Source: Macrostomum lignano (lineage: Eukaryota). Taken from it: 64,000 bases of DNA. The notes beneath the pieces were generated by a model. The model was not told the origin of the DNA, made no database searches, and saw only the letters and a program-made list of their open reading frames with translations. The position numbers and the translations under genes are program-made. The stretch spans positions 1 to 64,000 of the forward strand of contig NIVC01000956.1 in the NCBI GenBank assembly GCA_002269645.1, written 5' to 3'. Positions within the stretch are counted from its first letter, which is position 1. Each line of letters begins with the position of its first letter. This document shows positions 1,040 through 29,312 of the stretch, piece after piece.

Positions 1040-29312
<28,273 letters not shown>

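What the first reader, a model, noticed from the sequence alone, without database searches (positions are those of the whole stretch)
4835..4860. One missing base decides whether this androglobin keeps its proximal heme histidine
Seen: the minus strand reads GAG TCG GCG CTC TGG GTC TCC TGT TAG, and the downstream homology is in the -1 frame. Ungapped alignment to human ADGB as I recall it (LQTAHYP, His F8) puts codon 4849-4847 at F8. Repair A (extra G in TGGG) gives ESALWGLL, so His is lost. Repair B (A between 4849 and 4848) gives ESAHLGLL, so His is kept. Heme binding hinges on this site.
Basis: partly seen in the sequence, partly recalled or inferred. Interest (0 to 1): 0.7.

Follow-up and report, generated by a model that had tools for sequence, protein, structure and literature searches.

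The report
Frameshifted flatworm androglobin exon, no histidine
The stop codon and frame jump are real in this flatworm (Macrostomum lignano) androglobin exon, but other records of the same species show the missing base is a G, so no heme-binding histidine is encoded under the only supported repair.

Summary
The minus strand 4858-4832 reads GAG TCG GCG CTC TGG GTC TCC TGT TAG. It lies inside one androglobin (ADGB) exon (5175-4628) of a Macrostomum lignano-like genome. Orthologue similarity switches reading frame between 4853 and 4838.

Two other M. lignano UniProt records read straight through as ...[15 protein letters not shown]... Repair B, which creates a His, has no support. No in-frame His codon exists nearby.

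Different methods place the proximal position (F8) at Leu 4849-4847, at the Gly codon at the indel, or at Leu 4838-4836. None is His. The distal E7 position is Trp and CD1 is Ser/Ala. Rearranged into normal globin order, this domain gives no Pfam Globin hit, whereas three invertebrate-type ADGB controls do.

In my sample of 45 ADGB sequences only 19 have His at F8; 14 have Tyr.

The same gene copy has two more frame breaks near 2444 and 2385-2383, the second at another collapsed G run. I favour an assembly consensus error. A real lesion in one paralogue of this neopolyploid cannot be excluded without reads. Low interest.

The parts
4832..4858 (-). The reported string GAG TCG GCG CTC TGG GTC TCC TGT TAG. 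The premature TAG is at 4834-4832 in the upstream frame.
4843..4845 (-). GGG run where one G is missing relative to two other M. lignano records. TGG (Trp, 4846-4844) and GGT (Gly, 4844-4842) share base 4844.
4847..4849 (-). CTC Leu.
4836..4838 (-). CTG Leu in the downstream frame. This is the F8 candidate in all MAFFT and pairwise alignments.
4943..4945 (-). TGG Trp at the E7 column. That column holds Gln in mammals and aligns to His58 of haemoglobin alpha.
4628..5175 (-). ADGB exon of 548 nt. It encodes the end of androglobin domain II (to about 4985) and then globin helices E-H.
3914..4112 (-). Small exon encoding a Ser/Arg-rich linker (...[10 protein letters not shown]|K). Its splice phases fit the neighbouring exons. 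The boundaries are approximate, were read by eye, and are not supported by orthologue similarity.
3084..3790 (-). Exon with the IQ motif (3728-3663, [22 protein letters not shown]), globin helices A-C (about 3629-3495; the CD1 region reads SLSPLAGDE) and androglobin domain IV.
2283..2543 (-). Exon for the start of domain V, with two further frame breaks. There is an extra base near 2444 and a missing G in the GGG run at 2385-2383. An in-frame TGA lies at 2390-2388 if read in a single frame.
6148..6375 (-). Preceding exon, encoding the first part of androglobin domain II.
11456..11896 (-). Two calpain-like exons (Peptidase_C2), intact in this window.

Best explanation
The window carries one copy of the Macrostomum lignano androglobin gene on the minus strand, running from about 20200 to beyond position 1. 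In the exon that encodes globin helices E-H, a run of four G has been recorded as three (4845-4843). This produces the frame jump and the TAG. Whichever residue is taken as F8 (Leu, Gly or Leu), it is not His. The distal E7 position is Trp and CD1 is Ser/Ala. This flatworm's permuted globin domain therefore most likely serves as a helical scaffold around the calmodulin-binding IQ motif and does not hold heme through a proximal His.

Shown here: the frame jump, its position, the reading in the other records, and the absence of His. Inferred: that the missing G is an artefact, and that heme binding has been lost.
For: - P0019 reads [24 protein letters not shown] and P0013 reads [40 protein letters not shown]. 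Both are M. lignano UniRef entries.
- The exon is one base short for its splice phases.
- Orthologue similarity changes frame between 4853 and 4838.
- A second break of the same form occurs at 2385-2383, where CGG and GGT share a G. Correcting it together with the extra base near 2444 raises the match to Patella ADGB from 33 to 53 bits and restores a Pfam Androglobin_V hit.
- The other M. lignano database fragments change frame at different places, and the window is intact at those places. Indel noise therefore varies from record to record.
- About 93% of M. lignano read pairs map to several loci (PMC10733133). I infer that this hampers polishing of the assembly.
- There is no in-frame CAY codon between 4930 and 4780.
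- The ADGB profile rearranged into normal globin order matches cytoglobin (2.5e-13), haemoglobin alpha and neuroglobin. This fixes the F8 and E7 columns.
- The window's domain alone gives no Pfam Globin hit. Controls from Patella, Glandiceps and P0133 do.
Against: - No reads or transcripts of M. lignano could be reached, so artefact and real deletion cannot be separated.
- Three frame breaks in about 1.5 kb of coding sequence is a lot for a polished assembly and would also fit a decaying paralogue.
- P0013 and P0019 come from an error-prone assembly, so their extra G could in principle itself be an error. Two records agreeing and restoring the conserved frame make that unlikely.
- Loss of heme binding is inferred from sequence only.
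- Alignment around helix F is uncertain (posterior 0.3-0.5).
Confidence: 0.6

Rival explanations
1. The single-base deletion is real. This is one of the roughly three paralogous copies in the neopolyploid M. lignano genome and it is becoming a pseudogene. Other copies (GGGG) stay intact, and none of them encodes a His.
For: - Three independent frame breaks lie in conserved exons of this copy.
- M. lignano has about three paralogous copies per locus, roughly 98% identical (PMC10733133), so one copy can decay.
- Real indels also favour homopolymer runs.
Against: - Where frames agree, the protein is 98.6-100% identical to the other records, and there are no nonsense or obviously damaging substitutions.
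- All upstream exons are intact.
- Two of the three breaks are the same GGGG-to-GGG collapse, which I take to be a typical long-read consensus error (from general knowledge, not tested here).
- The splice sites are intact.
Confidence: 0.3
2. One reading: an A is missing inside the F8 codon. The true sequence would be CAT CTG GGT (ESAHLGLL), and the protein would keep its proximal His.
For: - It restores the frame.
- It puts His in the column where hmmalign and the AlphaFold2 helix boundary place F8.
- It scores 3.3 bits more than Repair A against the ADGB profile.
Against: - Two other M. lignano records read L-W-G, not H-L-G.
- The score gain is only the value of the inserted His.
- The site is not an A run.
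- E7 and CD1 are also non-canonical.
- MAFFT places F8 four residues further on.
Confidence: 0.03
3. The DNA is correct and the break is bypassed during expression, either by a very short intron starting at GT 4843-4842 or by a -1 ribosomal frameshift at CUC UGG GUC.
For: GTCTCCTGTTAG (4843-4832) begins with GT and ends with AG.
Against: - That interval is 12 nt. This is too short for an intron, and being a multiple of 3 it does not change the frame.
- The next AG gives 43 nt, which also fails to restore the frame and would remove conserved residues.
- CUC UGG GUC is not an X XXY YYZ slippery heptamer.
- Other copies simply carry the extra G.
Confidence: 0.02

Closest known systems
Mammalian androglobin (human or mouse ADGB; ferret P0034 used here)
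   Same: Same architecture and order: calpain-like domain, domain II, globin helices E-H, IQ motif, globin helices A-C, then domains IV and V. The exon under study aligns with the ferret region that carries Gln E7 and His F8.
   Different: Human ADGB has Gln792 (E7) and His824 (F8), and CD1 is assigned to Tyr976 (PMC9249397, PMC11077535). The window has Trp, Leu or Gly, and Ser or Ala at those positions. It also has an FG loop about 5 residues longer and a long Ser/Arg-rich linker before the IQ motif.
ADGB orthologues without His at F8: Lonchura striata (P0026) and the teleosts Neosynchiropus (P0031) and Lampris (P0038) have Tyr; the beetles Phaedon (P0093) and Sitophilus (P0099) have Tyr; lamprey (P0029) has Gly; the fluke Fasciolopsis buski (P0020) has Ala
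   Same: F8 is not His in a large share of the ADGB sequences sampled: H 19, Y 14, other 12 of 45 (names). The teleost domain in normal globin order also fails to hit Pfam Globin.
   Different: Most of these carry Tyr, which could still ligate iron. Macrostomum has an aliphatic residue or Gly and has also lost the E7 and CD1 residues.
Unnamed relative P0097 (Logan run DRR639838, genomic contig L001)
   Same: It is the closest sequence outside M. lignano: 41% identity over the upstream part of the exon and 35% over the downstream part. The called product starts at the same point of the exon (MICERHYWKT against AELHNWKS). Where the exon ends in the contig was not checked.
   Different: It has an uninterrupted frame and keeps His (LDSSHCPPP) and a Gln at E7. 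The organism is unknown.
Non-heme globin domains (for example the Bacillus subtilis non-heme globin mentioned in PMC4527676)
   Same: A possible analogy for how the domain works: a globin-derived helical domain kept for a structural or signalling role without heme.
   Different: There is no sequence relationship beyond the globin superfamily. This is an analogy only and was not tested.

Membership tests
Androglobin (ADGB) | N-terminal calpain-like cysteine protease domain | tested here: met
   Pfam Peptidase_C2 E 1.4e-8 on the joined exons at 11896-11456 and neighbours. About 40% identity to Glandiceps and Patella ADGB. Catalytic residues were not examined.
Androglobin (ADGB) | Androglobin domain II directly upstream of the globin part | tested here: met
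   PF22068 E 1.6e-13 and 4.2e-29. It ends at ...WVGSEEEI, about position 4985.
Androglobin (ADGB) | Circularly permuted globin: helices E-H, then the IQ motif, then helices A-C | tested here: met
   The order along the gene is 5175-4628 (E-H), then 3728-3663 (IQ), then about 3629-3495 (A-C). The family profile rearranged into A-C + E-H order matches cytoglobin at 2.5e-13 and neuroglobin at 1e-10 over its full length.
Androglobin (ADGB) | IQ calmodulin-binding motif inside the globin domain | tested here: inconclusive
   [16 protein letters not shown] aligns with the orthologue IQ sequence (VKLQKVWRACWVRK). Pfam IQ scores only E 0.017, 15.3 bits, below the 20.3-bit cut-off.
Androglobin (ADGB) | Domains IV and V downstream | tested here: met
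   PF22069 E 1.2e-19 and PF22070 E 5.5e-10. The second hit was obtained after correcting two frame breaks.
Androglobin (ADGB) | Uninterrupted coding sequence | tested here: not met
   Frame breaks at 4845-4843, near 2444 and at 2385-2383. The C-terminus is cut off by the start of the window.
Heme-binding globin | Proximal His at F8 | tested here: not met
   The candidates are Leu 4849-4847, Gly at the indel codon and Leu 4838-4836. There is no in-frame His codon in 4930-4780. The F8 column was checked against His87 of haemoglobin alpha.
Heme-binding globin | Distal Gln or His at E7 | tested here: not met
   Trp (4945-4943) sits in the column aligned to His58 of haemoglobin alpha and to ferret Gln, with hmmalign posterior '*'.
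Heme-binding globin | Aromatic residue at CD1 | tested here: not met
   Orthologue K-Y-P-F-Y aligns with L-S-P-L-A in the window.
Heme-binding globin | Recognisable by the Pfam Globin model when put in A-H order | tested here: not met
   No hit at E <= 1. Controls: Patella 2e-14, Glandiceps 6e-16, P0133 1.3e-8, ferret 5e-4 (below the cut-off), teleost no hit.
Heme-binding globin | Globin fold | tested here: inconclusive
   The AlphaFold2 model has confident helices at the expected places (mean pLDDT 75, pTM 0.64). Foldseek against the PDB found nothing. This is expected for a permuted order with a 90-residue linker. The model is also driven by its alignment.
Heme-binding globin | Binds heme | not testable with these tools
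   Needs recombinant protein and spectroscopy.

The most novel reading that the evidence does not exclude
Macrostomum lignano androglobin, and perhaps flatworm androglobins generally since the fluke Fasciolopsis also lacks a His at this position, may be a natural heme-free androglobin. E7, F8 and CD1 have all been lost, while the IQ motif and the calpain-like and C-terminal domains are kept. In a transgenic, regenerating model animal this would test directly whether the role of androglobin in cilia and sperm needs heme at all.
Probability: 0.5. Interest if true: 0.4.

Novelty: new member of a known kind. Interest (0 to 1): 0.2.

Why it matters
It matters little for biology as it was framed. 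The "deciding" base is almost certainly a G, and no histidine is at stake.

There are two modest points of value.
- It flags consensus or indel problems in this assembly. There are three frame breaks in one gene, two of them at collapsed G runs. It also shows that the existing M. lignano database fragments of this gene are frame-hopping and carry unrelated names.
- The proximal His of androglobin is far from universal (His 19, Tyr 14, other 12 of 45 sampled sequences). The Macrostomum protein has lost all three classic heme-pocket residues. This fits published evidence that calmodulin binding by ADGB does not depend on heme (PMC9249397). It also suggests an experimentally tractable heme-less case.

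Tried and rejected
- Word-indexed protein searches with the exon, the calpain exons and the repaired peptide returned only fragments or nothing. The exhaustive HMMER search supplied the orthologues.
- I looked for contigs encoding P0001 and the window's own ORFs (the 97-aa ORF and the truncated 47-aa ORF) to get read-level evidence. None is on record.
- phmmer of the exon against PDB sequences gave only chance hits.
- Foldseek of the AlphaFold2 model against the PDB gave no hits.
- A tiny intron or ribosomal frameshift was rejected on length, phase and motif grounds.
- I tried to judge assembly quality from the neighbouring nicotinic-receptor-like gene. Its three visible exons are intact, but they cover only about 270 codons, too few to decide.
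- I tried to name the organism of P0097 (run DRR639838). No paper mentions it.
- The original androglobin paper (PMC3350324) is not held. No paper mentions androglobin together with Macrostomum.

Full report
**What is there.** The window is flatworm DNA. The exon's translation is 100% identical to part of a Macrostomum lignano UniRef entry (P0001). The best hits of an exhaustive HMMER search are also M. lignano entries. The string lies inside a single exon, 5175-4628. The exon has a cccgcag|AG acceptor and an A|GTGAGT donor and is flanked by intronic tandem repeats.

**Gene identity.** The exon belongs to an androglobin (ADGB) gene on the minus strand that runs from about 20200 to beyond position 1. 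Pfam finds the following:
- Peptidase_C2, E 1.4e-8
- Androglobin_II, E 4e-29
- Androglobin_IV, E 1e-19
- Androglobin_V, E 5.5e-10
- a weak IQ motif, E 0.017

tblastn with ADGB from an acorn worm, limpets, a tunicate and a ferret lays out the exons in the expected order (names).

**The frame jump.** The upstream frame carries the end of domain II and then helix E. It matches orthologues down to 4856-4853. The other frame matches the same orthologues from 4838/4790 to 4635, for example [13 protein letters not shown]...[17 protein letters not shown] against Patella FNEALYTMLRKTL...AWRAFNYDCTTVNILGL. The upstream frame stops at TAG 4834-4832, and the downstream frame is closed above 4895. The exon is 548 nt long, whereas the phases of its neighbours require a multiple of three. 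So one base is missing, or two are extra, somewhere in 4895-4835.

**Which base.** Two other M. lignano records cross the site without a break. P0019 (A0A1I8FFU8) reads ...[25 protein letters not shown]0013 (A0A1I8FAX4) reads ...[40 protein letters not shown]. A-L-W is encoded in the window's upstream frame and G-L-L-L-G-D-P in the downstream frame, with TGG and GGT sharing base 4844. This reading needs GGGG where the window has GGG (4845-4843), and it cannot be obtained from the window's DNA by any splice.

Repair B inserts an A into CTC to make CAT. It has no support. Both records have Leu-Trp-Gly rather than His-Leu-Gly. There is no in-frame CAY codon between 4930 and 4780. Its advantage against an ADGB profile is 3.3 bits, which is just the value of the inserted His. 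A 12-nt GT...AG interval and ribosomal slippage were considered and rejected on length, phase and motif grounds.

**Where F8 is.** I first checked the column itself. An ADGB globin profile rearranged into normal order (A-C followed by E-H) matches solved globins over its full length: cytoglobin at 2.5e-13, haemoglobin alpha at 3e-13 and neuroglobin at 1e-10. The ADGB "LeaaHvP" His aligns with His87 of haemoglobin alpha, and the "fleQA" Gln aligns with His58. This agrees with the published human Gln792 and His824 (PMC9249397).

Placing the Macrostomum residues in that column is less certain:
- The AlphaFold2 helix F (residues 38-46, CLAQAESAL) ends at that same Leu.
- Left-anchored ungapped register against the nearest relative P0097, counted by eye from the sequences, gives the Gly at the indel. 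Right-anchored register gives Leu 4849-4847.
- Four MAFFT or pairwise alignments give Leu 4838-4836.

None of these residues is His, and the FG loop is about five residues longer than in the orthologues.

**The rest of the heme pocket.** E7 is Trp (4945-4943). The CD1 region, K-Y-P-F-Y in orthologues, reads L-S-P-L-A. Rearranged into normal order, the Macrostomum domain gives no Pfam Globin hit at E <= 1. The same construction gives these results for controls:
- Patella: 2e-14
- Glandiceps: 6e-16
- a third invertebrate-type ADGB (P0133): 1.3e-8
- ferret: 5e-4, below the cut-off
- a teleost with Tyr at F8: no hit

F8 is not a fixed His in this family. Among 45 representatives aligned here it is His in 19, Tyr in 14 and something else in 12. 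The Tyr group includes a finch, teleosts and beetles. A lamprey has Gly. The fluke Fasciolopsis buski has Ala, with no His nearby. So heme binding does not hinge on the missing base. The pocket is degenerate in this species and in many others.

**Artefact or real lesion.** The same gene copy has two more frame breaks in the exon at 2543-2283. There is an extra base near 2444, and there is a second collapsed G run at 2385-2383 where CGG and GGT share a base, the same pattern as at 4844. Read in a single frame, this exon hits TGA at 2390-2388. Correcting both breaks raises the match to Patella ADGB from 33 to 53 bits and restores Androglobin_V.

The other M. lignano database fragments change frame at many other places where the window is intact. 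M. lignano is a neopolyploid with about three near-identical copies per locus, and 93% of read pairs map to several places (PMC10733133). I infer that this makes polishing unreliable. Where frames agree, the window is 98.6-100% identical to the other records at the protein level and carries no nonsense changes.

I therefore favour consensus errors (about 0.6) over a decaying paralogue (about 0.3). I could reach no reads or transcripts to settle this.

**Comparison with what is known, and verdict.** This is a member of the androglobin family by every architectural criterion tested. As recorded here it has a broken reading frame and lacks the features of a heme-binding globin. The gene was not labelled androglobin in the M. 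lignano entries I saw. They carry unrelated automatic names. I found no paper that mentions androglobin together with Macrostomum.

The finding as framed, that one base decides the proximal His, is not supported. What remains is a probable assembly error in an ordinary orthologue. There is also a modestly interesting side result: flatworm androglobin appears to have given up the canonical heme ligands. That fits reports that calmodulin binding by ADGB is independent of heme (PMC9249397).

Noticed in passing
window 2283-2543 (minus strand): There are two further frame breaks in the androglobin domain V exon: an extra base near 2444 and a missing G in the GGG run at 2385-2383. Read in a single frame the exon hits TGA at 2390-2388. 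Correcting both raises the match to Patella ADGB from 33 to 53 bits.
   Followed up: yes
proteins P0026, P0031, P0038, P0043, P0058, P0093, P0099 and others: The proximal F8 position of androglobin is Tyr in many lineages, including a finch, teleosts and beetles. It is Gly in a lamprey. Only 19 of the 45 sampled representatives have His. I did not find this discussed in the papers I could read.
   Followed up: partly
proteins P0063, P0123, P0139, P0120, P0129, P0091, P0157: Some androglobin-like proteins match the profile only at the end of domain II and again at the start of domain IV, with the two matches adjacent. They seem to lack the globin and IQ part altogether.
   Followed up: no
window 57300-63662 (plus strand): A nicotinic acetylcholine receptor-like gene (Cys-loop channel). 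Visible exons include ...WTDEHLIWLPDEFNGTQSIHIPSGSIWTPDIV... and ...FPFDSQRCNVTF...YACCSEPWPDITI.... The vicinal Cys pair is typical of alpha subunits. No Pfam check was run.
   Followed up: no
window 1-1032, 8587-9176, 11938-14837 and many others: The introns of the androglobin gene are packed with tandem repeats. These include (TATC)n of about 1 kb, (ATAG)n of 0.6 kb and (CTAT)n of 2.9 kb, plus arrays with units of 11 to 67 bp directly flanking the exons, for example 4169-4626 and 5237-5749.
   Followed up: no
window 48799-49890 (plus strand): An uninterrupted 364-codon open frame with a hydrophobic N-terminus and a hydrophobic stretch near the C-terminal end. It may be a single-exon membrane or secreted protein. 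It was not searched.
   Followed up: no
UniRef entries P0001-P0004, P0007, P0013-P0015, P0019, P0061: At least six M. lignano database proteins cover this same androglobin locus as fragments that change reading frame repeatedly. They carry unrelated automatic names (SH2, protein kinase, Oxidored_molyb, FAD_binding_7, DUF4510).
   Followed up: partly
L001 1286-1942 (Logan run DRR639838): An unidentified organism carries the closest non-Macrostomum version of this exon (41% identity over the upstream part, 35% over the downstream part). The reading frame is intact and the His (LDSSHCPPP) is retained.
   Followed up: partly
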